A stretch of 61,652 nucleotides of DNA, counting the filler, from Sluysia triapertura (taxonomy: Eukaryota): the NCBI GenBank assembly GCA_046118255.1. It is 4 parts of 4 records of this genome, joined end to end, with 100 filler letters (N's around TTAATTAATTAA, not from the genome) between each part and the next. Parts side by side here need not be neighbours in the genome. Positions count along the whole stretch, not along the records: positions 1 to 14,898 come from JBJNIA010244986.1; 3 more parts are not named here. One strand, written 5' to 3'. The notes under the pieces are model-generated. The model saw nothing but the letters and a program-made list of their open reading frames with translations. It searched no databases and was not told where the DNA came from. The position numbers and the translations under genes are program-made. Shown here one piece after another: positions 1 to 53,200 of the stretch. Within the stretch, counting starts at the first letter, position 1; the number at the start of each line of letters is the position of its first letter.

Positions 1-68
<68 letters not shown>

Positions 69-86
69 TGTAATAATAGTAATAAT
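1..86. repeat. (AAT)n microsatellite
   Basis: Direct reading: tandem ATA/AAT units, degenerate after about position 67. Confidence 0.95.
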
Positions 87-172
87 ATACTGTATTGAAG
101 CTTTATGGAAAATACATTAAATTTTAGGAAAACTCAAAAAATCTTTAGAAATTTAATAGTAAAATTTCTAAC

Positions 173-1183
173 GCTTTTGAAATGGATTTAAGTGCAGCTT
201 TTCTCTCCCGATGAAGAAACCAATTCAGAATATTTCTACACAATTTCGGAGGGCATTTTGTTTCGACAGAATCTGAATTTGGACACGCCAGTCTGAAAAA
301 GCGGTAATAATCATTTACAGACCAGGCCTTGCGAAGTCGAACTGCGAAGTCTAAACATGAATCTTGATAAGGAGGTGGCGGTAAACTGGCTAGAGTAGTA
401 TTAATATTCAGGAAATCTCGGGTAAACATGTAATACAGGATTCTGTATGCAGTAAATTCAAGATGATCTTCACATTCGATTCCTTCTTCGTATAATAGCT
501 TGATCTGACTTTGACATTGATTAAATTCCTCGTGATCACCAGCTTCCAATGCAATCGTGGCATGCACCTTATACACACGCAATGTGAACTCATCTCGCAC
601 ACACTGCACGGTGAGATCCTGTCGAATACTCTTCATCTGTTCGCACACATGTCGATAATCTAGATGCTGATCATACCACAAACTCATACAATGAACTAAA
701 GCTTTCTGAAGAACCAATGGTGGTCGCACTTCACTGGGTTGAGGAGCTCGAGTAAGTCTAAGATATCTTTTTTCCAATTGTTGGCATGTTCCAACGATAG
801 GACCAGATTGAGTTTCGTCAGCAACGACAGTGTTGACTGTTCCTACCCGGTCTATGCTCCAAGTTTCATCAGTATATCCGATATCTCTTGCCGATTCCAC
901 GTTCGCGCTCACGTTGTCATTTGAATCTACAGGAGCCTCCACAAACTGTCCCGAAGAATTCAAGTGCTCTTTAAATCGAGACGCTCTGTGAGCTAATTTC
1001 TCTGAACTTACTAAACATTGCTCCAGTTGAAATTTCTTTTTCCCTTTTTGTTTCTTTTTACTTATATTTTTGTTGGTAACAGTTATTTGAATTCCAGTAT
1101 CTTGGTTATTGTTATTATTACTCTCATTGTGGTTTTGATTTTCCGTTTGCTTGAGCTTCATCAATCGGCCGCCTTTTCCGATT
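173..1183 (-). CDS. LENG8: LENG8 exon 7 (SAC3/GANP domain)
   Basis: Acceptor TTAG ending at 1184, donor GC|GTTAGA at 172; SAC3/GANP motifs in ORF 145..1224. Confidence 0.93.
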
Positions 1184-4100
1184 CTAAGATAATGACTCGT
1201 TTCAAATTCAAATTTAAAAAACATTAACTACTTCATAATAAGGATTTGAAAATACATTTGAATGTTATTTTATTGTAAATTTCAGTAAGAAAGTTTTATT
1301 TAAAATTATTTACTGAGAAATAATTTGATAGAGAAATTTTGTTAGAAAAATCATTTGGTCTTAATCGATTTTATTTTAATAAAGATTTTTCATAAAGAAC
1401 AATAGATGTCAGAAATGAATTGAATTGAATTATATTATCAGATATTGAAATAAATTTAGAAAATTTTAGAAAATCTGACTTACACAAAATCACTGCAACT
1501 GTAAATTATATCAAATTTGAAAATTGAAAACCGATTTTAAAAAGTATGGATTTTGTGAGCGGAAAATCACCAGATCAAGTACTAATTTAAAAGATTACTA
1601 TACATTTCGATAACGCTTTTGGGATGACTAATACTAATATTGTAAAGAACAAAAACCAACCTGTTATCAATCGAATAAGGATTTGAGTTTTGTTGATCTT
1701 GATCGGCAGAAATCAAACGAAACTTTTTATTCTTCGAATGAAACTGCCGCTTATTAAAGTTGGAAGTGGAAGATGGCGACGAGGAACCACGACTTCTCTT
1801 ACGAATATTCTCGTTTGAATCACGCTTAGACCGATAATTGTCATAATCCTCGGCAATTGCGATCACATCATCGCCCGAAGATTCAGAATTCGACTTGTAG
1901 CGAATCCAAGATGATTTTGATTTATGACTAGAAGAGCTACGACGATTTCGACAGTGTCGAGAAATTGATCGAGTAGATCTACGCGACCTAGATTTAGATG
2001 ATCGAGACGATCGAGACCTCGACGATCTCGGCGATGATCTTGATCGCGAATCAGAACCAGATCTGGATTTTGTTCTATTTCTTTTATTACTTCGGTTAAA
2101 TCCGGTACTATATCTGGCTCCTCTACCTCGTCCGCGTGTACCACGTGCTAAATTACCACGAGTTGAGTGTGTCATGACTGGGGATCGAGACTTGGAACTA
2201 ACTGATGACTTAGAACAACTGACACGAGCCTTACTACGAGTACTATTACTACTGAAATTAGATGCATTAACAAAATGGGAGGCTGTATTGGAAGTGTTGC
2301 CTCTTTGGGAATAGAAATGGGCATTAGAAATATTATAATTAGTGGTGACAGAATGGGTAGGTAAGTTGTTATGTCTGGAAATAGATGTGGCTGTGGCCGA
2401 CAGTGGTGTTCTTCCATAATTAGGCGGCAGGTAATTAGAGGCCACTTGCAACCTAACAAATATCCCTTGTTAATTATCTAATTTGAACACATATCGGTTA
2501 ATGATTCAGAATAATGTTTTATAGAAAAATAATAGATTTATTATAAATTTAATAAAATATAGTTCGAATATTATGAAAAATTTCGCACCATCAACACTGC
2601 ATCAAAGTTTCGCATCTTTGAAATAAGATTAAATTTTCTACTACACTAGAACTCCAAAAACTGGAACATCCTGAAACGGGAACAACTTTCTATAACTGGA
2701 ACACACTTGTAGCTTTTATTTTTACTATAATTTTAGAACAGATAATTGTGTTTTGTTTAAATATTATTAACCACCATATTTTATTCATTTTTGTGATTAT
2801 TTCTTTTACTTTACAGATTTTGTTTGACACAGTATTTTAGTATCTAACTTAATACTTTGCATACCCATATAATGGGGCATCGAAATCAAAACGAAATCAA
2901 ATCAATTTAACACTAAGCGATAAATTTTAGAAAAAGTAGATGACACTGACAATAATATATTAGATGAATACACAAAATTTCAGAACTACTCTTTTCAACT
3001 TAAGAAAACAGAAACATGAGATATGCAAGCCACATCATCATCGTCAAATAAAATGAAATGATGTGAAAGGAAAATTATTAGCAACTTGAAAGGAGCTCAA
3101 CTTGTATAAATGATTCGTGTCGAAGAGGGTCTAACTATATCAGGTCCAATACCAGCAAATCTTTTATTTTAACTAAAACTAACTTCTTCCTGAAACTTGA
3201 ACATTGAACATGTTCCAGTTTGGGGAGTTCTAGTGTAAACGATTTGGAAGTTCTTCGAGGTACGCGGTTTTTAATTGGAATCTTTTAAGGAAACAGACCT
3301 AAGATGATTAACACCTGAAATTGATGTAATATTCTTTTCGAGGAAATGAAACTATACATATGCTAAATTTGCTATTTAAGATAGTAATGCGAAAATGTTT
3401 GAAGAATATTCGACAGAACATTATTGGATTCGAAGACCATTATTTATGAAAAGTAAACTATTTTTGTTACCATTTATTTACTTATCTAAGTTCATATAGA
3501 CCTTAAAATAATATCACACAAAATAAAATTTTGATCTGGTGATATTCTCTTGAACCACTACACAAAATGCAATCTTAAAATATGTTTTGTTTAGTTACAT
3601 GATTATATACCTTCGGCTATTTCAAATATTGAGAAAATATAAGTTAAGACTTAGAGCTCAAATTACGTTTGTAATTATTTAGATATTTTAAATTAATTTA
3701 ATAAAAACATTTTGTTAAATAAAACACATGACTCGAATTACTTCAACCGTTATTATTTGAAAATTAACATTAAGCATCGTAGTTCGAAGGGTCCCATTTT
3801 ATATACATGAGGTTTCATTTGTTGTTTCACTTAGGCCTTATTTATTGCTATCGACATAATTGTTAATGCAAATTATCAAATTTATGCTAAAAATGATTTC
3901 ATTGCTGTTGCGGAAACTTTAAGTTACCGAGTGTACAGAGAAAAGTAGTACTTCTGATCATTTAAAAACTAGAAGTACAAATAGCCGGTGACTGAGTACT
4001 TTAGAAAATCGGACTAAACTCATCATTTACTCCAACCCAATAATTGTTATGCTGTGAGTAATAATGTAATGTTTGATAATAAATTTAATAACGAAAAAAC

Positions 4101-12009: not shown

Positions 12010-14898
12010 TATCCAAACACTATATTGCTTTGATTTATCTAACACTTAACCTAGGGCAAAATATTTTTTAGCAGGGTTCGGTTACAGTAAGCGTCTTATA
12101 ACGTATCATTGGCACTCCTGTAACTAATAAGTTAAAGATCACTTAAAAATCAAATAAATTAACTTAGGAGGGTCTTAGAACTACTAAATAAATTAATTTT
12201 TCAAATTCAATAATTTAATAATTAATTAACACAAAAATCAAATTAGTTTATTGGAAAAATATACATAGAATGTTAATAAGCTTAAAGATAATAAGTTATA
12301 AAGATAAAACAAAATAAATATTATTAGAGATTAAAGCTCCGAGAGCGTTTAATCTAATTCTAATAAAAATTTAAGTGGAGTTTACCCCTCAATATATGGA
12401 GGACTTAGAAAACTTTATAAATTAATATATAATTTACGTATATTTTAAAATTTTAACTTCTAAAGTTAAAATCTAACCTAACAAATATATAAGTTACCAG
12501 ACTCCTCGATCGATTGCCAAATTCCAAAATTGTCACAATTTATCTCGAAGACATTAATATCCAACGAATAAAATATTGCAAATGGCGACTAATAAATATG
12601 GCGATTTTCATTGGTTGATGCTAGTTTATATACTAGTCGTCAACCAATGAAAATCGATGGAATGTTCTAAACTATTTTTAGAAGCTTATTTTCTATTTTA
12701 GAAATTTTATTTTCTTTTTTGGAAAATAATTGTTTTTTAAGTAATTTTAAAAATTAATAATTAATTTTATATGCTTTATACAATGCAACGTATAAAATTC
12801 TTAAACCTTAAAGTAACTATAAAAACATAACAACATGATGTTAGGAAGGAATCCATGAGATCTGAAAAGATGAAAATAATAATAATAATGATAATAATAA
12901 TAATATTAAAATTATAAGAAATAATAATTTCTAACCTGTTAATTCTCATGGAATACTTAAATGAATAATATAAATTAAAAGAAATGTTAGTTCACAAAAG
13001 AATAATGTAAGGTTGCTGCAATACAGAACATAGTGGGACTGAATAATAATAATAAAATAATAATAATAATAACCTCTGATTGTTCTAAATTAAAAATAAA
13101 TAAATACTAAACAATTAAATTTTCTTGCTGCAACCTGAAAAAATAATATTATTGTGTAAATAAAAATCACTTATTATCTTTCCGAGATGAGAATCAATAA
13201 AAATTAATTTAATTGTAAAATAAATACATGTAAATAAAAAACAACTAAAAATTACTCTCGAATTTTTATTTCAATTTAGTTGAATAAATAAATAATAAAG
13301 AATTATAAATAAAAATAAATTAGAAATTACTTTGTGTCTTTGAAATAAATTTGTGTTCGAGGATTATCCGTTGGAAAATTAATTTGGATCGAAGGAGTTT
13401 GACGTAACTTCTGATTGACCTGAGTACATTTAATTGGTTTTGTTTTACGAGTGATTCGTCGTACGAAATACTAAACTCAAATTTGAAAATTTTGGTAAAA
13501 CAGTTCCTGATTATCGGATCCATCTTACTTATTCAAGGCCTTAAGACTAAATTAACCTTCTATAATTTAAGAGAGTTTTACAACCATGTTGTAGATTTAA
13601 TGATGCTGAAGATGAAGAATCTTGAAGTATCTTAATTTTTGGTTCTTCATTTTATTTTAATATTTGTGTTTTGTTTTGTTGTTTTATTTTGTTTTTTTCA
13701 TTTTCATATAGTAGTTCATTTAACTAATTTAACTAATAAATTATTGATTGTTATAAAGTTAATAAAGATCGCGGGGAACTTTATTGTAATTTGATTGTTA
13801 AAATGTCAAATAATATAAAAGCTAGATTTTGTGATACTACAAATATCAATATACTAAATGTTAGAAGAGCAATTATTAAAACTTCCGATAAAAGTAAAAT
13901 TAAATAGATGCTAGGATTTTCTCTTATTTTCCTAATCTAACAATTATAATTTTAAACGCGTGTTCATCTGCGGTATACGGTTTATAACATAAAGTAGACG
14001 TATCCACAGAAAATAATTACGAAAGAAATTGCCTTACTCTTGCGAATGAAAATTACTTAATAACAATTACAATAATAATAAATTAGATAATAGAAAAAAC
14101 AATTTTCTGATTGTTAGATATGAGATTTTGGTCTAATACTTGTGTGAAATAAGTAGAATAAAGTAAGTCAAAGATGTGAGTCCACTAACGTATTGGACTT
14201 ACCTGCTAGGGCCAGCCGTTGGATTTTTGTAAGATAAATTTAAAGGAAAGTAAGTCTCTGGAGTACTTTTTTTATCTAGAGGTGAATAGTATTCAAAAGA
14301 TTGTAATTTGAATTACAAAATTAAATAAATCAAATTTAATTATATATTTTTCGCACGATTTCTCTATATGGAATCAAAAGTAGAATTTTACCTGCTAGAA
14401 TTAAATTCTAGTCTCTTGAAAACTAGATGTGAGATTTTAATTGATTTTGCAACTATGTAATTTATGGATTAAAAATTGTAAGAAAAGAAAATTCTTTTAT
14501 TATTTAAATACAAAATATGGTTGAAAAGAATAATGATAAAATTTACATTAACTAACTATCGTTAGTTAGTTATAGTCAGTTATAATATATCAAGTGATTT
14601 ATGAATATCACGTTAATACTGTGACCGAGTTTCATAAATCTGTAAGAAAAATGTGTAAAGTGTACAGAATAAAGATTAAGAAATGGTGAGTCCACCAACG
14701 TATTGGACTTACTGACTTAACGGCCAACCGTTGGATTTATCTGATAATGCAAAGAGGTCAATAATTGTATTTTTTGTCTTGCAAGAAGGTCAAAAAATTT
14801 TATTTAAATTTTTTAAATTAGACAATATTTTAATTCGATTCTATTTTAGAACCGTTAGTGATTTTAATGAGGTTCTTAAACCGAACCTTTAAATTTAT
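12010..14898 (+). mobile_element. Non-coding LTR/leader-like region of a dispersed element family
   Basis: 12030-12780 is collinear with 51470-52930 (ACTTAACC..GGCAAAA..GGTTAC; TCAATATAT.GG.GGA; CCAAT.AAAATCGA; TTTTGGAAAATAA). It holds two copies of hairpin motif A, a long palindrome and a duplicated pseudoknot-like motif. Termini not identified. Confidence 0.5.
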
Positions 14899-22230: not shown

Positions 22231-25200
22231 AAAAACAATGGCACACAAATTATCAATACCTTAAAATGCCTAAAATGTCAAATAGGAAAAAAAATCTCTG
22301 AAGTATGAAACATTCTTATGCGATATCTTTCAAAGCATTCTGGATGAGTTATTTGAAGTTTTCAATTCTGTCGATTGTATCCTGAAAATTAGGAAATTAA
22401 GATAGTATAGAATTACATTAATAACATTCTTGAAAGATATTGTGATGGAATTCAATATTTAATTAACCCGGTATGTCAGAAGCCTCAAGTATTTAAAACT
22501 GAAGCAGCAAAGAGACAAGGCATTTTAAATATTTTGAATTTTAAAGTATTTTGATTATATACGAAAATGATAAGCAACTAAATTCAGAATCAGTTACTAT
22601 TAACACTCAATCTTTGATGCCGAGTGGCACTGCGTTTCCTGAGCTTGTTATTCCTCCTAACAATATTGGTTACGCAGATTTCTTCACGATGATCTATGAG
22701 ATTTCCAACGCATTAAGTAAAATTCAAATTTTAAATTTCGAAAAAAAGTGTCAATTTTAGTTTAAAGATTATAGATTTAGAGAGAAAATAATTAGTGAAA
22801 AAAAATCAAGCCACCGAATATGATTATATGAGGAAACATGTCATCAAATGATATTATACAAGAACTTAATGACGTAGATGACGTTCTTCCGAAATTTATT
22901 ATCAAAGATTCGCACTCAAAATTATTTGTTAATAATTATAAATTTAACCGAAACGATGAGTTACTATTGAAGCTTTTAATTCCTGATAATGACTTGTTAT
23001 TTAAAATCATTTGTCAACGTTTGATAATAAGACAAAACACTTATAGATTCTAAGTTCGATCTCAGTAGACTTACTTGTCGATAGGAATATTCAAAATGCT
23101 TTGAGAATTAGAAAGTCTTTATTCACTCTGAACAGTTGTTAGAACCTACTATGGAATAATTTATTAAAGGATCCTTTCCAAATTTATATCTCTGATGTAC
23201 ACAAAAGTTCTCGCTAGTAATCAAAGCTTTACTACTATAATTCCCTATCAATTATATCAATTTGTTTATTGTCCTCAGTATTCGGATGTTTCCCAATATC
23301 TATATCACCCTCCCGAAGGTATATTCGCAAATGGAAGCTTCTCTTGTTATGATGGAAATGAAACGACGATGAGAAAGGCTGATTAATCAGATCTAAAGTA
23401 CGAGGATGCAGTTATGGTCCAAATAAATTGCAGTTTAGGATATTATAGTTTAGCTAATAAACATTCTTGGCGTCATTTTTCTCATTTTTGTCACTGTGAA
23501 ATAAATAATGAGGCAGGACACATTAAAATTTTCTTTTTATTTTATTTTATTGTAATTTTATAAAGTTTTTTTATTATCGTAATTTTATAATTTCATGCAT
23601 ATTTTTTAATTCTTTTTGGTTTTTTATTCGTAAAAGTGATATATAAATGAATTTGAGCTATCTGAACTAGTTAAACCCAATGATAATAATAATAATAATA
23701 TATCAAGTCTTATTAATTTATTCCTTTCTGATAATGTTAAACTTGAAGACTGCCAAATTCTATTCCTTCATATAAAACTTTCAACTTGTGCTTAAGATTA
23801 AAACTAATAACTTTATTTATAATATTTCAATCGTTTACTTTATAATTAAGAATTACTTCTAAGTTTATCCTCTATAATTTTTTACTGACTGAGCTTTAAA
23901 ATCTTAATTAAAAACAAAGTAAGTTTAATCAGTCTCTTCCTTAACTAAAATTAAATTCTCTTTGTAACTTTAGCTTAAATGTGCTACTTTTCGTTTAATT
24001 TACTTAATCTCCTTAATGTAGTTTGAAGAATGAGTTCAATATTCGTTTCTAATTTAAAATTCTATAACTATTCTAAATCTTAAAAGTTTCACTTTTCAAA
24101 CCTTTACCAGTAGAGTATAAAATTTAAACAATATTTGTATATTTATAGAGTATGAATTTGTAATATATTTTTATTTCTAATTTGTAAAAATATAATTTTA
24201 GCAAATAATAAAAATGTTCAAATATTTTTAAAATAAATCTAATCATTAATTATAAATGTACAATTATTTTATTTATGTGGATGCGAATTAACAATAAATA
24301 ATAAATTCTTATCTCTGACATTTTTATATTTCTGCCAAATTATTATAATCAACTTTTAACATTTTGATTATTTGTTTACCTAATAAAACAATTTTTATCT
24401 TTAAAATATATTTTGATAATTTTTATTTTGACAATTCGTTTAATAAAATTATTTTATCATAAACATAAAAATAAACATAAAATAATAATAATAATAATAA
24501 TTCTGTGATATAAAAAGAAAGGTTTGTTCCAAAATCACACACATTTACGGAGATTTTCAAAATCTTAACTTCTATAGTTGTATCGGCTGATTAATTTGTT
24601 ATATTCTTTTGGGAATTTCGGTTTGATCGATTAAAACATTGATTTGTGGTCTACTCCGACAGTTCGACATCCACGGACATTTGTATCAAATTGCCGATTT
24701 ATTGTAAATTTTTACGTAAGTTTTTTTTGTACCTAAGTGTTCATATCTATTATGTTAGATTTAAAATCCACTTAAAATATCTTATAATTTGTGATGCTCA
24801 AGAATTAATCCTGAGTTAAAATAATTTATTAAAATTACAATTTAAATTTGAACATCTTAATTGTTGTTTGTATATCTATGTATGTTAAAAGTTTGTATTT
24901 TATTTATTACTCAATTTGTATTTAACAAAACTTATTTAATTTGAATTAATTGAATAAATTATATAACGTAAGAAGAAAAGTTAAATGTTGCAAGTTCTTC
25001 AATAATATTGAATTAATCGTCAAGTTTTTAAGAATAGTAACGTAAGTCATAATTAAATTAATAACATTAGCTAAGAAATAAATTCGATTAAGATAAGTTT
25101 TGCAATTGAAACTTTGTACATATCTTTGTAAGTAGAATATTTTACGCATAGTATCTTAATATTTAAGAAATCTTGGAGTAACGTCTTCTACGAATTTAAC

Positions 25201-27299
25201 TCCAAGCGAACCCGTTGATTAAAATCTATATTTGCTTTGGTATTTTTTAAATAGATATAAAATACCAGCATACCAATAAACTAAAAGAATTTATACTATG
25301 TCGAATTGTTGTACGTTGAGTTCTTTTAGTTGTATGTGCACTAATTATTTAATATTTAATATTAATTATTTAATATTAATTCCAATAATGTTTATCTTTA
25401 ATGTCGTGAGTCTTATACTCGTCTAAGCTGTTCGAGATGGAAATGCATAATAGACAATGTTCATTTATTGCTTAAAAATTTCACTTGGGTTAAATTTTAT
25501 TCTATTGGAATTATATTTAATTATATTGGAACTATCTCAAAATTTGATAAAACTTTGCTTTGATTTACAAAAAACTTCGGTTTATTTTCAACACTGCATC
25601 TCGTTTCATAAAGACTATTTTATTTCTCAAGGAACTTTGTCTTTAGGTTATTTCACAACGTGACAATCTGATAACTTTATTTTACTTTAAAACTATTTTC
25701 AATAATATAAATTCTACGTAATTTTCAACTCTAATTTCAAGCCCTTTTAACTTGCAAGAAAACAAATAGAATTAAACCAACAGTAATTTTATTTATTTAT
25801 TTATGGAACAAAATTAAAGATGAAATTTAAAAATGTAATTAAACTTTTATTCAATAGTTTGGGAATTTTTTATTCGGACTAAAAATCAACAATTTGTGCT
25901 GCAATAAATATTTAAGACTGTCTCAAACAGTTGCAATTACATATGATAAATTCGTCGACAAAATTTATTCAGTAATGAGTTCGATAAAATAACTTCGCCT
26001 AACAAAATTAATTTATTCAGTAGGATAGATTCGTTCAATAAAATACCTCGCTCAATATTACTTCGATCAATAATCGTGTGTCAGATTGTTAATCAACAAT
26101 GATATTTATATAGTTCAACTAAATTTTTGTCAATAATTTAAGGCATTAAATTACGGCACACATAATAAATCACAACATAATAATAATTTCTAATATATTT
26201 GTAAAAATTCAAAGGTTTGTGTTTAAACAAAATATTACTTTCTATTAGTTGTTTCGTTAAAACTTATAACTTATTTTCTATAGCTAGAAAATAATGTATG
26301 ATTTGAAGTTATCAAGATTCAAAAGGTTAAATTAATTTTGATGTAAACTTCTTCGATAATATCTATACTCTGTATCAATATATTAATTCTAATTTATCTG
26401 AAAGTCTAATCTATTAATGTAAACTTATATACTCTGATTTATTTTACAAGTAATACCCATACTCTCTATATTAAATCTACCTTATCCGGAGATACGAATT
26501 CTGATACTCGTCCGGTTATTCGAGATGGAATTGCTAAATAATCGATTAATTATTGAATTAAACTCTTGTCATTCGACTATGTCTCGATCTATTTCATATG
26601 ATTATACTTCAAGATACTTTATTTTACTCTAAACTTTGTTTTGAGTTGTAATAATTCTATTAAGAGGAAATTTTTATTTTATGTTCTTATAGTCCTATTA
26701 TCAATCACGCACAGAAGAAAACGAAATAAAACGAGAATTATTTTATTTGGATTCAGATAAAATAACGAATGCAGTATAATTTAATTATAACACAAAATAA
26801 TTTAATCATAAATATGTGATTAAAATAATTATCTTTACTTTATTTTGGATGAAAGTTTTATATAAAACAGTTCTTACTTATATCATCAAATTAGTCAGCC
26901 TCTATTTAGAATTCGATTCAGTAGTTCGTAACGTTTATCAAAGTTCGATATCACCACAAGAGTAATTTTCGACCAAAAATAAAATAAAATATATAATTCC
27001 AAAATTGAAATTGAATGTATTACAAATTAATATGCGATGTATTATTTAACAAATTAATATACGGTGTATTTAATTTACGATATAATTCCAAAATTATTTA
27101 TAAATACAAATGATGCTAATTATTTATGTACAAATGTATAATGTATTAAAATTATTTTCAGTTACAATATAAATTATTATTGTATAATAACTTTGATTAA
27201 TTTTAATTTTATGGAATTTTAACTTTATTCTATTTGATTAATGTAAGAATTTTTATTAATTTTAACAATAATATATTAATTTATATTGCGCTCATATCT

Positions 27300-37377: not shown

Positions 37378-38625
37378 TTACTGAAATTTTAAAAGAAAAA
37401 TAAAAATACTGTGGTTTTTATATCTTAACCTTACTCAAGCAGCAAAATGGAATAAAAAAGGTTCGTCTACAATACGCGACTTACGAATGGCGTGGCTGTA
37501 GATACGTGAAATAATAAAGTGAAAATTCTCAGATAAAATTCGTTGAAAATACGTTGATTGTTACTTAGTGAGTGCAATAAAATTATTCTATCGGTATGTT
37601 TGAAATCTTTAGAAATCTAATGCTTTATTATACACTTCTCTTATGTTAAACCTTAATTTATCAAAAAACAATTATCAAACTAAATAATCGTTTACTTGAA
37701 TTCTTTATTTAATTATTCAATAATTCAAAGGATCAAATAAGAAATATTCTAATATTTATTAATTACACTAAAAAAATATTAAATTAACAATAATATTAAT
37801 GCAAAAGCAAATATTTAATTAATAACAAAATGTCTAAAATCCAATTAGTCTAATAATATAACTAAAAATAATAATAACAATAATAAAGTATTTTTCTTTT
37901 AGAAATACCTAGTCTGCTAGAGGCTGGGCCAGAAGTTTTAATTAGTTTTAAATGATCTTGTCATTGGCCTTAAGGACCAACGGAAATAGGATATTTTACG
38001 TGAGATTTTATGATTCCAATCGAGTACAATTTATAAAAATTAGACTTACTACTTGAAATTTTTAAACGTAAACTGTTGGCCAAAATCAATAGAATACTGT
38101 TGCTGCATTAGCTTGTTGAAATTGTCGTTGAATGTTGCGTTAATCTAATGTAAATACTTGTGGTAGATTTTTGTCGACTTTTTCTCTTTGTCGAATACTT
38201 TATTTGTCTGTTGAATAAGATGTTAACTTTATTTTGCATTGTTGTGCGTCCTTTGTGAATAATATTTGTTTTGAATACTAATTTTTTTGTCATAATGACA
38301 TTAAAATTTTTAAATGATAAAAACAAATACTTTCCAGATTATTCTTTTTCTTAAATTTAATTTTTTAATTATAATTTTTGATATTATTGTTTAATGTTTA
38401 ATTATTATCATACAGATGTATTATGAACAGTATGTATGCTTCAGATATGAAAAAAATTTCCTTTGTTCACTCAAAACACCTGTATATTAGTGAAATCATT
38501 ACTATAATTATTATTAAATTTGGAATTATTATTTTATTAATATTACAAATAAACGAAATATCCTTTTTCTTTTATCTAAATGAGTCATTTGAAATTCAAT
38601 GATTACGTAATAATAAATATAATAG

Positions 38626-43313: not shown

Positions 43314-46300
43314 GACTAAACAATAACAATTATTAAATTGTTAACTTTTATTGTTTCTTTTTTATTTTGGAAATACAATTTACTAAAAATACTTTGTCAA
43401 AATTATTTATCACATAACTGCTAAAACGTAATTGCTAAAAAAGTCTCTAAATAAAAATCATTAAAATTATTAAATTAAAATGTAAATTCAAAAACGAATA
43501 CGAATAATATGCAAAATGAAAATCCTTTCAAATATCAGAAAATTTATTACTAAAGCATTTATTGATATCTAATATAATTTAAACGGTTTTTTCTCATCTT
43601 TAAGATAAAAAAGTTATCTGAAATATACATTAATAACAATGTAAATTATAGATTTTACAAGCAGCTATCCGAATAGATTGATTTCTTGTAGGATTTTAAT
43701 TTTCAGCAAATAAAAAATATCCTGGAATACTCTATTATATAAGTATATATAAGCAAAGATAATATTTTGCAAAACGTTTTACTTTCATCATGAATTCCAT
43801 CGACATTTTCCTCATTTTTAGCATTCCAGTTCATCTGAATATAATCCTTGGAAACATATGAAATTATTGATTTATTTTCAATATTCAACTATAACTAAGC
43901 ATCAATAAGTATATATCTTAACGATCATGATCGTTTCATAAAGAAAACTTAGTATACAGTTGGAGTAACTTGTCAAAATCAGCGATGGTCATTTGATTTC
44001 ACTTTCAGATATATCTTTGAAGAAGATATATCTAAATTATGAAGAGCATTGCACTAAAATTTATTAATATTAAACCATTATAAAATCCACAAATCAGGTC
44101 ATTCACACACCTGCAAGATAACATTGTAGCTAGGAAAATATTACCTAGTTTCTGATCTCAAATAAAAATATCTACATAATGTAGAAAATTTGCTTAACTT
44201 TATTAAGTACTTATCGGGAATCAATGTATTAATAATAATATTTTAAAGTAACAAAGAATTTTAATATTTATTAATAATAATACTAAAATTTTTTACATAA
44301 AAATATAGAAATATATTTATTTTTAAATGCTTACATTTTTGGTGATTTAATTTTATTTATCTAAATATAATTTAATTTTGACGAAGTATTTTTCGAAATC
44401 ATAATTATCAAACAACATGAACATAACGAAAATATGTGTCATATCGAGGTACAATTTCTATGACAACTTTATGTTTTTTATTTGTTGGTTTGTATTAAAG
44501 CGTTAATTTTTCTAATTCATATAAATGTTTAAAAAATAATTAAATTAATCATATTATAAATTAAAAATTAACAATGTTATTAAGTTTTGAATTTATGAAT
44601 GATTATAAAATTTTGGTGATTAAATATTTACCTTTAAATTCTAATAATAATAATAATAGTAATAAGAAAAATATTAATAATAATATAATATAATAATTAT
44701 AGTGCTTAAATAAATATTATTTTATAAATACGGTTCACTTAAACAATATATTATTTTCATTTTTGAAATATACTCGAAAATCAGTGCAATTATTTTTAAA
44801 CCAAGACAAAACAAATTTCGGTTGACGCACACAGAATTATTCGAAGTACCGTTTTAGTTTAAACTTCTATTAATAGAAACACTTGAAAACAAAATTAGAA
44901 ATTTTCAGTTCGATTAACATTTGATTTAAATTCATTTAAGTATAATTGTAATTATTAATACTATGTTCAAAATCGATCTACTTGTTCATAATGTTATTTA
45001 TTGTATATCTACAAGTTAGAACTGATTAAATTTAAAATTAAATTTTTATTCCATCAAAAAACTTATTTGTATGAGTTTTAATCAAGTTCAAAACTTAAAT
45101 GATTGAATATTTATTTATTATGAATTTGAGAAAAAGGTTTCATTTATTCGAAATTTACTTTCAAAGCTGTTGAATTATTTTTATTAATTTATCTACTAAA
45201 AATTAACGCTTACAAGTTTCGTTTTTATTTTTTAACAGCCAATGCTAATTTTTTATTCCGATTTTGTTTTTATATGATTAAAAAGTATAATGTGACAATA
45301 AAAAAGATTATATGTTGTATTTTAATTGGAATAATTGCAGTACTACAAAAAAAACAGATTCAAATTGATGTTTCACGTTTAAATGATTCATTTATGTTAT
45401 CTTTCTGAATAGTCAAATTAATTTTGCTGGGTGTTTTTCTTAATCTAAAACCTAACCTACAGCAAAATAGTTAATTATTATGAGTCCGTTTACAGTATAC
45501 GACTTACCAATGGCGTACCTGTAAAAATTACGTGAAAGCAATTACCAAAATTAACTCGTACAAGAATAATCTTCGCCTTAACCTAACAATAATGGATAAA
45601 ATCGTCAACAATTAACAACTAATAACTTAAAAAACTAATTAACTAATTAAGACCAACGTTAACTTAACAGGTATTTGAATTAAAATTAAGTAAATAACTA
45701 TGATATAGGAATGTGCTCTTATCTCCAAGTTCTATTACTATGACCGTTAAAATTTTTATGAAATTAATATCAAATTGAACGTAATTCTTATTTCTTAATA
45801 ATAACAAACAAAATAAAATATATATTAATTAGGAGTTACTCCGTAGTTAACAATAATTATAAACTCAACTTAAACTTCTTATTTATAAGACAAAAAACTC
45901 AAAACTCCTCTAATGTTTTTTATTATTGCACAAAATTAAAAACAAATATTAAATGATAATAAATAACACACAAAAAACAAAATTAAGAAACATAATTCTT
46001 GATTCTTTGGATTCAGAACATGTATAATAATTTGAAATTCTTAAAAATAATTCACCAATATTTTATATACTTTTTAATTGAAAATTATATTAATTCTAAA
46101 TTTAATTCATTAATATATTATTGATTATTTTATAGATTATCACAATCATTGATGATAATCCTTATAAATATATGCAATTACACACCATAAGTAATGTAAT
46201 ATACTGAGCAGTATATAAAGTTGATATTATTTTATCAATTACCGATCAGATTCATTCGATCTTGTGTTGTTAATTTATGTTTTATTGAGCGCTAATTTAG

Positions 46301-50211: not shown

Positions 50212-53200
50212 ATGAATGTTATTAAATTATTTCTTTATATAATGCCACTATACAAATTACATGGTATTAATGGAATCGAAGATTTTTCTGATAGGTTTCA
50301 ATTTAGATTTATTCCATTCGTGCTGGTAGTGTGTGGAATAACAGTTTTTTTATGCGGCTTTTTGCGATGGCCAATTACATGTATATTTGCAAATAATCCG
50401 TATGGTATGAATTTTCATGAATATTCGGAATATTTATGTTTTACTGAAGGCACTAGTGTAATTCAATATCACATTTCTTCACATTCAAATGATATAGATA
50501 AATATTCTTTACGCTACTATTCATGGTTACCGTTTTTATTTCTTTGTCAAATAATTATGTTTTCTATACCAGAAATTATATGGAAAAAGGTGCATAAAGA
50601 GTGTGTAGGATGTTCATTAAAGCCGATTATTGTGATAGGGTTAAATATAAATAATAGTGATATGGATGATAAAGAAAGAAATTCAAAATTAAGTGACTTA
50701 ACTGAAGCAGTTAGAAAAATAAACAACTTCGTTAGATTTTTATTTTTTAAAAACAATTTTGTCAAATTATATATGCATTTTCCTCAATAAACATACGAAA
50801 ACTTATTTTATATTCACCTTAATATATTCTAAAATAAATTTTTGGTCAAAACTTGATATTCATTTTATTTGAAGTTAAACTATAATAAAATCTAACGTTT
50901 GTAATCTTAATAAATTAGAATTTTTCTATTTAATACTAGGCAGAAAATTTATTCTTAAAAAGGTTGAATTCTACTGTTAGGACCATTTTTATGCGACTAA
51001 CAGACTCTGCCGGCAATTTTTCTATTATTGCTACTTTGATTACGATGATAGACCTAAATGATAGGTTTACGCAGAATCCAAAGGCATTTATAAATGGATA
51101 ATTAATGTCCATTGTTCTAAAACGTAAGTTATTTATTGAGATAAATAGAATAAGCTTCTCTGTGTTATGCCGTTCAGATGGAGACTGTATTTTTTGTAAT
51201 GGTAATGAAATGTTAAGAGACATTAAGAATAAAGTTAAACTTGAAGTGGAATATTATGAAATGTTCTGCTTAGTTCCATTGGAGAAGAGTGATGATATTA
51301 AACATTGCATAAATTTCAGTCATATAAATACTGCAACAAGATATTAGCATTTCAAATGCTATCCTTTCAATAATTAGCACAATAATTGGTAGTCCTAATG
51401 TATTTTCACTGCTTGGTGCAAGGAAATATCAAATGTTAGTACACTAGGTTGAGAGAAATACTATATTTTCATGCGGTTTTCCTAGCACTTAACCATGGCA
51501 AAAAAAAATTGAGCAGGTTCCGGTTACGGTAAATAACTTATAAGGTAGGATGGGCGTTACTGCAACTGTAAATTAACAATTCTTATCTTAAACTATATCT
51601 TTAAATGAATGTTTTTCCTTTTAATTATGCAATTTAACTTCCTTTTATTCCTTTAATAATTATTCTTAGAGGTTCTTGTACTACCTTGCTTTTTAAATTA
51701 CAAATCAAAAATGCACTTTACATAATAAATAAAACAATGAAAATTTAACAATTTATTCGAAACAATACAAATTTATAATAGACATTTATAAAAAAATCAG
51801 GTGCAACAATAAAAATAAATTTAAAATAAAAACCTATTAAGTATTTAATTTATAATAGTAACGAATTTTAAAATGAAGTTTAACCGTCAATATATCGGGG
51901 AAATCAAGTGTATAAATAAAAATTTGGTAGATTTTATGATATTAATTTCTGTTCAGATTTAACTAAAACTTAACTGGACAATTATAAAATATATTAAACG
52001 GGTCCACCTATAATCTAAGTTTTATATCTCACGGAAGACTTAGTTATAGGATTGTAATATGTCAACGCTACGAAAGAGTCCTTACTATCAATTATGTATA
52101 TCTATTGACTACTGATTAATGTTACTTAATTGTATCTTTTTATAGCAGACTCAACAACTTTACGAATCAAATACAAAAATTAAAATAACAAAGTTTAATA
52201 CTCTAAATATTCTACGAATTTTTATTTTTCACAAAGAAAATATTTAATAATACAAGTGCGAATAAGTGAATATTTAATAATATAAGTGCAAATAATAACA
52301 ATAATAGTAAATATATCAATTTAAGGATTTCTCCTAAATTAAATTATTGAATAAGATTTTAGTATGATTTTAACCCAGGTGAATACTTGAGTGTGGAAAA
52401 TGAATATGATTTTGAGTATATTTTAATACAGCAAAACTATTTTATTTTTATGTACTTTTATAAGTTATTATTGATTTAATTAATTAAAAAGTTAAACAAA
52501 ACAATTTTATAATTTTAATATCTACATAATCTACATAATATCTACATTTCAAAAAATAACTTACGAAGTTCATGGAATTGGGAAATAAAATAAACAAAAT
52601 GAAATAAGATAGACAAAATTGAGTGTTGCAGAATAATATTATTAGCCTTCTCCAGATGCAATTGATGTTGATAAACTGAAGGCCTTCAGATTAATTATAA
52701 TGTTTTTGTTAAAATTGCGAATAAAACCAAAATTTCTGCTGAAATTGTGAAAAATAAAATTATAACAATGTGACTATTTGTATAGGCTAACAGCCAATCA
52801 AAATCGAATAGATTTCTAGAATGTTCTAGAAACTTCGTTGTATTTTATAAGCAAATTTGTTTTGGAAAATAAGTTTCTTTTTTTATAAAATTGGTCTTTT
52901 AAATAATTTTAGACAATTGTAATGACAACCTAACGTAACTTACTCATTTAAAAAAATTTGACCTCAAAATTTGACACATTTTACAATGAAATTAGGGATT
53001 AAGTGATAAAATATAGAACGATATACATATGTAATCAAAAAGTTTATTACTGTAATTATTCCATCAATAACCTTCATTGTGATCAAATATGTTCAGATCA
53101 TTGTTGTCATTTAACCCATGTCAATCTCTATCCCAGCCATAAAGGTCATCCCGGGGAGAATGGGAGGCGTCGTCAAACTGTCCAGGAGAAAGCAAGTCGA

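What the first reader, a model, noticed from the sequence alone, without database searches (positions are those of the whole stretch)
12020..12125. Dispersed two-hairpin motif A with compensatory changes in six copies
Seen at ~12020-12125(+), 13905-14025(+), 25170-25275(-), 37405-37510(+), 45420-45540(+) and 51460-51570(+). Layout: hairpin P0 typically ending ...ACC-N-GCAAA, a spacer, GTTCG-like, then hairpin P1 with [TA]G[GA]CGT-like in its 3' arm. P1 outer stems differ in sequence but still pair: GTTACAG/CTGTAAC, TCTGCGG/CCACAGA, CTTGGAGT/ACTCCAAG, TCTACA/TGTAGA, TTTACAG/CTGTAAA, GTTACGGT/ACTGCAAC. P0 does too (ATTTTGCTG/CAGCAAAAT; GGTATTT/AAATACC). Inference: a selected cis-acting RNA structure (packaging, translation or catalytic) of a mobile family; it lacks the hammerhead core.
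Basis: partly seen in the sequence, partly recalled or inferred. Interest (0 to 1): 0.72.

Follow-up and report, generated by a model that had tools for sequence, protein, structure and literature searches.

The report
Conserved two-hairpin end of LTR-like repeats
The two-hairpin motif is real and its main hairpin is kept by compensatory changes, but it is the conserved ~110-base end of thousands of ~1-kb mobile repeats that start TG, end CA and duplicate 4 bases on insertion (most likely LTRs of retrotransposons), so it is a cis-acting transposon signal, not a free-standing RNA gene or ribozyme.

Summary
Both copies in this piece exist, at 12026-12124 and 13909-14010. Each is the first ~110 nt of a high-copy repeat in a 619 Mb AT-rich animal genome. 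Family F1 gave at least 1980 candidate matches and F2 at least 397. A core pattern matches 2154 times against about 97 for its control.

A covariance model found more divergent heads in fetched loci, with at least nine different outer stems. On 43 heads, 87% of hairpin P1 cells pair, against 69% when shuffled and 15-45% when slid. Ten of 11 pairs show changes on both sides. P0 is a real hairpin in most families, but it could not be tested formally.

No Rfam family or tRNA matches, even when the heads are searched alone.

The flanks decide the class. The elements begin TG and end CA, and they carry a 4-bp target-site duplication in one register only (permutation p<5e-5). That rules out SINE/LINE-type and Helentron (DINE-1-like) insertion. 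It points to integrase, most likely solo LTRs.

The function is inferred: an LTR-end structure used in replication, possibly U5 read on the minus strand with a stretch complementary to the tRNA T arm. The folded strand, RNA versus DNA, and LTR status all remain unproven.

The parts
12026..12770 (+). Copy of repeat family F1 (LTR-like, about 0.95 kb when complete). This copy starts TGCT and has lost or diverged in its last ~180 nt.
   Evidence: Thirty other copies align from 12021-12026 onward, and full copies align to ~12769. Full copies in other loci run on to ...CCTAACA.
12026..12057 (+). P0: terminal hairpin. Family form is GCTGTGG(TT)...(AA)CCTACGGC; this copy is mutated in both arms.
   Evidence: Alignment of 30 copies; folds of many families; majority letters from contigs of a public run (12054 G>C).
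12074..12080 (+). Conserved heptamer GGGTTCG directly 5' of P1. Across families it reads R-G-T-Y-C-R. On the minus strand it reads CGAACCC.
   Evidence: Invariant or nearly invariant columns in A2; variants seen in A3.
12081..12124 (+). P1 hairpin of copy 1. Outer stem 12081-87 with 12118-24. Inner stem 12090-93 with 12113-16 (one C.A). Loop of 19 nt.
13909..14135 (+). Copy of repeat family F2 (LTR-like, about 1.2 kb when complete), 5' part. It has an internal deletion and is then interrupted by another repeat.
13909..13941 (+). P0 region of copy 2 (GCTAGG... with ...CCTAA/TCTAAC).
13960..13966 (+). Heptamer. This copy reads GTGTTCA; the family form is GGGTTCG.
13967..14010 (+). P1 hairpin of copy 2. 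Outer stem 13967-73 with 14004-10 (one C.A). Inner stem TACG/CGTA at 13976-79 with 13999-14002.
14592..14640 (+). Short piece of the same F2 copy, resuming after the inserted repeat.
   Evidence: 79% identity to the F2 copy in L053.

Best explanation
Motif A is the conserved terminal module, about 110 nt long, of a group of related ~1-kb non-coding interspersed repeats.

Shown:
- There are many families and thousands of copies.
- The elements begin TG and end CA and are flanked by a 4-bp target-site duplication.
- The module holds a terminal hairpin P0, a conserved heptamer, and a two-step hairpin P1 (7 bp plus 4 bp) whose pairing is kept by changes on both sides between families.

Inferred:
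- The elements are LTRs, mostly solo LTRs, of Gypsy-type LTR retrotransposons inserted by an integrase.
- The module is the part of the LTR that must work in cis during replication. Most likely it is the R-U5 end read on the window's minus strand.
- In that reading P1 and P0 are leader hairpins just upstream of the primer-binding site. The minus-strand heptamer CGAACC(C) would pair with the T-arm GGTTCG of the primer tRNA and help start reverse transcription. U5 or nearby RNA is reported to do this in avian retroviruses, HIV-1 and yeast Ty elements.
For: Repeat status and sharp start.

TG...CA with a 4-bp duplication:
- In 14 full F1 copies, 5' flank positions -5 to -2 match 3' flank positions +1 to +4 in 40 of 56 cells, against about 45% in mismatched pairs.
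- Only this register gives a signal. The permutation test on the flush 5-nt comparison gave 0 of 20000; the four positions -5 to -2 carry all the excess and position -1 adds none.
- The base before GCT is T in 14 of 14 copies.
- Of seven full F2 copies, six end in CA (...TACA; L053 is mutated at this end). Perfect 4-bp repeats occur in L032, L037 and L040 and in L053.

LTR-type reverse transcriptases are abundant in the genome (3354 candidates, most top hits of the compact 477-nt kind).

P1 covariation on 43 heads:
- 87.1% of cells pair, against 69.4% shuffled (0 of 500 shuffles reach it) and 15-45% when slid.
- 10 of 11 pairs change on both sides.
- The inner stem was not part of the search model and still covaries: UA 17 with AU 15, and AU 22 with GC 8.

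The F1 and F2 heads align without a gap from CCTA to AAATAA although their sequences differ.

Strand hints:
- The three non-Watson-Crick pairs fixed in P1 lineages are all C.A on the + strand, which is G.U on the minus strand. Overall there are 21 A.C cells against 6 G.U cells.
- All heptamer variants are transitions that would keep pairing with GGUUCG from the minus strand.

The module and the far end are better conserved than the middle: 88% and 80% identity at the head against 53-70% in the middle.

Precedent for tRNA-related sequence in LTRs, and for 4-bp duplications in animal elements, comes from PMC10886601. Papers on Ty1, Ty3 and HIV-1 initiation appeared in the search by title and abstract only; the retroviral details rest on my own knowledge.
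Against: - No full-length element was seen. None of 81 heads has a recurrent internal flank or a TGG-type primer-binding site next to it.
- No gag or pol reading frame lies in about 230 kb of fetched loci.
- LTR status therefore rests on the termini, the duplication and the size only.
- In F1 and F5, P0 has G.U pairs on the + strand, which would be A.C on the minus strand. The folded strand is not settled.
- The tRNA pairing idea is post hoc and rests on a 6-7 nt motif.
- No RNA data exist for this organism in the run index.
- Folding energies of single copies are not exceptional.
Confidence: 0.45

Rival explanations
1. The elements are the same LTR-like repeats, but the module is the U3 start on the + strand, or acts as double- or single-stranded DNA. 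P0 would hold the integrase attachment site plus an inverted copy of it, and P1 would be a protein-binding or plus-strand-priming structure next to the polypurine tract.
For: P0 includes the terminal TG and has G.U pairs on the + strand in F1 and F5. The far end of F1 and F2 also carries a terminal hairpin and a short CTAACA repeat, which suggests symmetric end signals. The strand evidence is mixed.
Against: U3 is usually the fastest-evolving LTR part (my own knowledge). The fixed C.A pairs in P1 fit the other strand better. Nested covarying stems 30 nt apart fit a folded single strand better than a duplex binding site.
Confidence: 0.22
2. The ~1-kb units are complete non-autonomous elements of a DDE-transposase or integrase-type DNA transposon, or of a still undescribed class, and are not LTRs. 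The terminal hairpins would be the recognition signal. Their layout resembles the 5' subTIR-IR hairpin, core, central repeats and 3' stem-loop of DINE-1/HINE elements.
For: All 81 sampled copies stand alone with unique flanks. Both ends are conserved and the middle is variable, with tandem repeats and microsatellites. The layout matches published DINE-1/HINE anatomy.
Against: Helentrons make no target duplication and insert at TT, whereas a clean 4-bp duplication of varied sequence is seen here. Helitron Rep is almost absent from the genome: 2 weak fragments. There are no terminal inverted repeats beyond TGYT...ARCA, unlike known cut-and-paste families with 4-bp duplications.
Confidence: 0.15
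3. The module is a decayed tRNA-derived Pol III promoter (A and B boxes). This would be as in SINEs, or as in Helenus-type TRIMs, which have tRNA-like LTRs and 4-bp duplications in animals.
For: GGTTC lies about 48 nt from the element start, which is tRNA-like spacing. The start TGCTGTGG faintly recalls TRGCY..YGG. Helenus elements in animals make 4-bp duplications (PMC10886601).
Against: ARAGORN and the Rfam tRNA model find nothing, even on the head alone. Runs of T5 and T6 lie inside the head on that strand and would stop Pol III. T-to-C changes at the invariant T-loop position occur in several families. Only one head is present per element, so there is no two-LTR TRIM structure. A promoter does not explain the covarying stems.
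Confidence: 0.06
4. The module is a self-cleaving ribozyme of a new class that trims the element RNA at its end.
For: The position is terminal, the element boundary is sharp, the structure is conserved, and a few nucleotides are invariant.
Against: No match to any ribozyme family in Rfam. The fold is two separate hairpins with no pseudoknot or multi-helix junction. In LTR-type elements the ends are set by integrase and reverse transcription, not by RNA cleavage. The boundary is explained by TG...CA plus the target duplication.
Confidence: 0.04
5. The elements are LINE-mobilised retroposons (SINE-like) with a structured 5' head.
For: This was my first reading: a non-coding repeat with a sharp 5' end, A/T-rich sequence after the 3' end, and abundant LINE reverse transcriptases.
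Against: Long variable duplications are not supported (p=0.18). The only signal is an exact 4-bp register. The 3' end is precise and has no tail.
Confidence: 0.03

Closest known systems
Cis-acting R-U5 leader structures of retroviruses and LTR retrotransposons (U5-IR stem and U5/T-psi-C loop pairing in avian retroviruses; primer activation signal of HIV-1; Ty1 and Ty3 contacts with the T and D arms of the primer tRNA)
   Same: Position at an LTR end. Hairpins kept by compensatory change. A short stretch that, on the minus strand, is complementary to the tRNA T arm about 45 nt from the LTR end.
   Different: Here no primer-binding site, no full-length element and no RNA have been seen. The sequence is unrelated. 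The assignment to U5 is an inference. The comparison rests on my own knowledge plus the titles and abstracts listed.
Helenus / TRIMp3 non-autonomous LTR retrotransposons (PMC10886601)
   Same: Non-coding LTR-type elements of animals with 4-bp target duplications and a GGTTC motif in the LTR. Many co-existing families.
   Different: Helenus LTRs are 100-320 bp, occur in pairs around a primer-binding site and polypurine tract, and contain a recognisable tRNA-like sequence. Here the units are single, about 1 kb long, not recognised as tRNA, and carry T-runs on the tRNA-sense strand.
DINE-1 / HINE non-autonomous Helentrons (PMC4067079, PMC2374699, PMC7492417)
   Same: A 5' terminal hairpin (subTIR plus nearby inverted repeat), a conserved core of about 90 bp with a second small hairpin, central tandem repeats or microsatellite, and a 3' stem-loop that changes by compensatory mutation.
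   Different: HINEs insert at TT without a target duplication and depend on a Rep/helicase. Here there is a 4-bp duplication of varied sequence with TG...CA ends, and Helitron Rep is nearly absent from the genome.
tRNA-derived SINE heads
   Same: A B-box-like GGTTCG at tRNA-like distance from the start, high copy number, and a shared head on different bodies.
   Different: No tRNA fold or A box, internal Pol III terminators, and an integrase-type rather than a LINE-type insertion signature.

Membership tests
Any Rfam 15 family (ribozymes, tRNA, snRNA and others) | Covariance-model match at or near the gathering score | tested here: not met
   Nothing was found in the heads apart from chance-level miRNA/sRNA hits (E 0.4-8, far below gathering scores), even when only 131-151 nt were searched.
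LTR of an LTR retrotransposon (solo LTR) | Termini 5'-TG...CA-3' with short inverted ends | tested here: met
   F1 runs TGCTG...TAACA, with T at the first base in 14 of 14 copies. F2 runs TGCTAGA...TTACA.
LTR of an LTR retrotransposon (solo LTR) | Target-site duplication of fixed length, 4-6 bp | tested here: met
   The duplication is 4 bp. In F1, 40 of 56 cells match against about 45% in controls, in one register only. In F2, 4 of 7 copies match perfectly and 2 match at 3 of 4 positions.
LTR of an LTR retrotransposon (solo LTR) | The same unit occurs in direct pairs around an internal region with primer-binding site, polypurine tract and gag-pol | tested here: inconclusive
   None was found next to 81 heads or in about 230 kb of loci. 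However, loci are at most 3 kb, the assembly is very fragmented, and no more genome sequence could be fetched.
LTR of an LTR retrotransposon (solo LTR) | LTR-type reverse transcriptase or integrase present in the genome | tested here: met
   One search found many intact compact RVT_1 matches. Integrase was not searched.
Helentron non-autonomous element (HINE/DINE-1) | 5' subTIR with nearby inverted repeat, central repeats, 3' stem-loop | tested here: met
   compared.
Helentron non-autonomous element (HINE/DINE-1) | Insertion at TT without target-site duplication; Rep/helicase partner | tested here: not met
   A 4-bp duplication of varied sequence is present. Helitron_like_N gave 2 weak fragments in 619 Mb.
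tRNA-derived SINE / Helenus TRIMp3 | Recognisable tRNA-like sequence with A and B boxes and no internal Pol III terminator | tested here: not met
   Searches found no tRNA. T5 and T6 runs lie in the head.
tRNA-derived SINE | LINE-type insertion (variable 7-20 bp duplication, 3' tail) | tested here: not met
HDV-like, hammerhead or twister self-cleaving ribozymes | Family-specific core and nested or pseudoknotted helices | tested here: not met
   No Rfam match. The covarying structure is two independent hairpins. Cleavage itself cannot be tested with these tools.

The most novel reading that the evidence does not exclude
The ~1-kb TG...CA units are not solo LTRs. They are a self-contained, so far undescribed class of non-autonomous elements moved by an integrase-type enzyme. 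Their two-hairpin terminal module, antisense to the tRNA T arm, would be the signal that recruits the replication or integration machinery. That would be a new structured cis element defining a new kind of parasite of LTR retrotransposons.
Probability: 0.12. Interest if true: 0.7.

Novelty: new member of a known kind. Interest (0 to 1): 0.35.

Why it matters
This is a clean natural example of a transposon-end structure held by compensatory change across many co-existing families. It offers a ready-made comparative data set for the cis signals of metazoan LTR elements, which are far less studied than those of retroviruses and yeast Ty elements.

For annotation it matters in practice. Thousands of copies of a covarying hairpin could be mistaken for a structured RNA gene, a SINE head or a ribozyme. 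The flank test used here, one fixed 4-bp register with TG...CA ends, sorts such cases quickly.

If the units turn out not to be LTRs, the module would mark a new class of integrase-dependent non-autonomous elements.

Tried and rejected
1. SINE or LINE-dependent retroposon was my first reading. Long duplications are not significant, there is no 3' tail, and the duplication is exactly 4 bp. Rejected.

2. HDV-like ribozyme at a retroposon 5' end. I checked the sequence by eye against the nested double-pseudoknot plan. The loop between the P0 arms is too short and A/U-rich, P0 is not in a common register across families, and Rfam gives no hit. Rejected.

3. Sm-site or U5-snRNA-like layout. The U-rich spacer is not conserved between families and is deleted in one family. 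Rejected.

4. Helentron/HINE. The architecture fits, but the duplication and the near-absence of Rep do not.

5. Covariance-model search of the whole genome failed twice on the server. I used a degenerate pattern search and model searches of fetched loci instead.

Only three LINE-type contigs were obtained. They carry no module.

7. Expression: no RNA run is on record. The one DNA run, held as contigs, only confirmed extreme repeat depth and showed no empty-site joint.

The flank test was redone from stored files by reference.

9. A look-up of a window ORF in other assemblies found nothing.

10. The ORF beside a head in L081 has no family match and looks unrelated.

Full report
**The sequence**

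The window piece is contig C244986 of a 619 Mb assembly in 263,945 contigs. Its G+C content is 21-39%. It carries a SAC3/GANP-family reading frame. A rhodopsin-type receptor gene lies in a related locus, so the organism is an AT-rich animal. Its name is withheld.

The other four copies lie outside this piece.

**Both copies are repeat ends**

A BLAST search of the genome with copy 1 gave at least 1980 candidates. The best 40 are 91-95% identical. Copy 2 gave at least 397 candidates at 85-90% identity.

Laying fetched copies on the window shows that similarity starts abruptly at 12021-12026 and at 13909-13916 and runs on to the right. The motif is therefore the first ~110 nt of longer elements:
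- F1 is about 0.95 kb in complete copies.
- F2 is about 1.2 kb in complete copies.

The window's F1 copy (12026 to about 12770) lacks its far end. The F2 copy (13909-14135) has an internal deletion and is interrupted by another high-copy repeat. A fragment of it resumes at 14592-14640.

A degenerate pattern for the core of the motif matches 2154 times in the genome, against 97 for its reversed control. Contigs of the one public run that holds the stretch pile up to enormous summed depth on the heads.

**Structure and covariation**

The F1 and F2 heads align without a gap from CCTA to AAATAA although they differ in sequence. In the 7-bp outer stem of P1, four pairs differ on both sides.

A covariance model built from 12 F1 and 12 F2 heads (R1) found only the two copies in the window. 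It also found many divergent heads that happened to lie in the flanks of fetched loci. Their outer stems are:
- ATTACAG/CTGTAAT
- GCTACAG/CTGTAGC
- TTTACAG/CTGTAAA
- CCTATAA/TTATAGG
- CCTACGA/TCGTAGG
- CCTAAT/ATTAGG
- GTTATAG/CTATAAC

It reads TACG/CGTA, AACG/CGTT or TAAG/CTTA, and AGCG/CACT in F1.

Counted on the 43-row alignment:
- 87.1% of cells pair, against 69.4% in shuffles (0 of 500 shuffles reach it) and 15-45% when partners are slid.
- 10 of 11 pairs have changes on both sides.
- The count of extra pair types is reached by 1 of 500 shuffles.

The alignment was fitted to the outer stem only, so the inner stem is an independent confirmation. Many rows are related copies, which inflates cell counts. 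The number of distinct stem types is the sounder measure.

P0 is a hairpin in most families, with shifted registers and different sequences. It could not be put on one structure line, and one within-family test was not significant.

Single-copy folding energies are unremarkable.

No Rfam family and no tRNA match, even when only the heads are searched.

**What kind of element**

I first read these as SINE-like retroposons. That reading failed:
- Long duplications are not significant.
- The far end is precise and has no tail.
- The head carries T5 and T6 runs that would stop Pol III.

The anatomy then recalled DINE-1/HINE Helentron derivatives: a terminal hairpin, a conserved core, central tandem repeats or microsatellite, and a 3' stem-loop.

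A position-by-position comparison of flanks, done on stored sequences, settled the matter. In 14 complete F1 copies:
- The four bases before the element match the four bases after it: 10, 12, 11 and 7 of 14, against controls of 0.30-0.56.
- No other register gives a signal.
- The preceding base is T in all 14 copies.

F1 is therefore TG...CA with a 4-bp duplication.

F2 ends ...TACA. It shows perfect 4-bp repeats (TTTC, GATA, ATAT, CTAC) in four of seven copies and 3 of 4 matches in two more.

This excludes Helentron-type and LINE-type insertion. Helitron Rep is almost absent from the genome, while compact LTR-type reverse transcriptases are plentiful.

The simplest reading is that F1, F2 and their relatives are LTRs, seen here as solo LTRs. 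This reading is not proven:
- None of 81 heads has a shared internal flank or a TGG-type primer site beside it.
- No gag-pol frame lies in the fetched loci.
- The loci are short and the assembly is fragmented.
- Further genome sequence could not be fetched.

**How it may work**

Within F1, both ends are better conserved than the middle. Between families, only the head is recognisably shared.

Three observations hint that the selected fold is on the window's minus strand:
- The non-Watson-Crick pairs that are fixed in P1 lineages are all C.A on the + strand, which is G.U on the other. These are the F2 outer stem, the F1 inner stem, and the CTATAAC subfamily.
- Overall, A.C cells outnumber G.U cells 21 to 6.
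- All variants of the heptamer (R-G-T-Y-C-R) are transitions. Read on the minus strand as CGAACC, they would keep pairing with the universal tRNA T-arm GGUUCG.

Against this, P0 of F1 and F5 has G.U pairs on the + strand.

On the minus-strand reading, the module is the 3' end of the LTR, that is R-U5. It would consist of two leader hairpins and a T-arm-complementary stretch about 45 nt before the LTR end. This resembles the U5 and primer-tRNA contacts known from avian retroviruses, HIV-1, Ty1 and Ty3. That comparison rests on my own knowledge; related papers were only listed.

This mechanism is inference only. The alternative is that the module is the U3 start or a DNA-level end signal, and it remains open.

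**Limits**

Only short head alignments made before that reading were inspected.
- No RNA data were available.

**Verdict**

The element is a conserved terminal cis module of LTR-like mobile repeats: a new member of a known kind, of moderate interest.

Noticed in passing
window 14154-14260 and 14686-14740: A third, unrelated high-copy repeat with at least 1837 candidates. It begins with a hairpin GTGAGTCCA-CTAACGTAT-TGGACTTAC, followed by a second small hairpin (CCAGCCGTTGG / CCAACCGTTGG). One copy is inserted into the F2 copy. It may be a 'motif B' of the same scan.
   Followed up: partly
window 12602-12656: A near-perfect 20-bp palindrome inside the F1 body. It gives a chance-level mir-1179 hit at E 3.8. 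This bin has the highest summed contig depth of the whole stretch, so the segment may be shared by more families than the head.
   Followed up: no
loci L101, L040, L054, L026, L083, L055, L056, L034, L011, L036, L109, L022: A second, divergent head lies within 2-3 kb of the first in at least 16 of about 100 loci, often back to back only 46-90 nt apart. That is far more than genome-wide density predicts. The elements cluster or nest.
   Followed up: partly
F1 and F2 copies, both ends (for example L026 1503-1535 and 2436-2447; L053 about 2620-2635): A short direct repeat (T)TTTCTAACA / CCTAACA occurs near both ends of the elements. The far end also carries its own terminal hairpin: GGTTGT..ACAACC in F1 and AATATT..AATATT in F2.
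   Followed up: partly
window 145-1224 (-): An intronless 359-aa reading frame of the SAC3/GANP family. The left 6 kb of the window looks genic, while the right 4 kb is a nest of repeats.
   Followed up: no
L112 48-2915 (+); L113 483-3032 (+): Apparently intact LINE reading frames. L112 combines an AP endonuclease, reverse transcriptase and DUF6451. L113 is clearly richer in G+C than the window. Neither carries the module.
   Followed up: partly
many contigs (for example C242366, C62119, C228911, C192163): Contigs often end 0-25 nt after the head. The assembler seems to break where the shared head gives way to family-specific bodies.
   Followed up: no
window 1-90, 12870-12925, 13042-13072: (ATA)n microsatellites. 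The same repeat sits inside F2 bodies in other loci.
   Followed up: no
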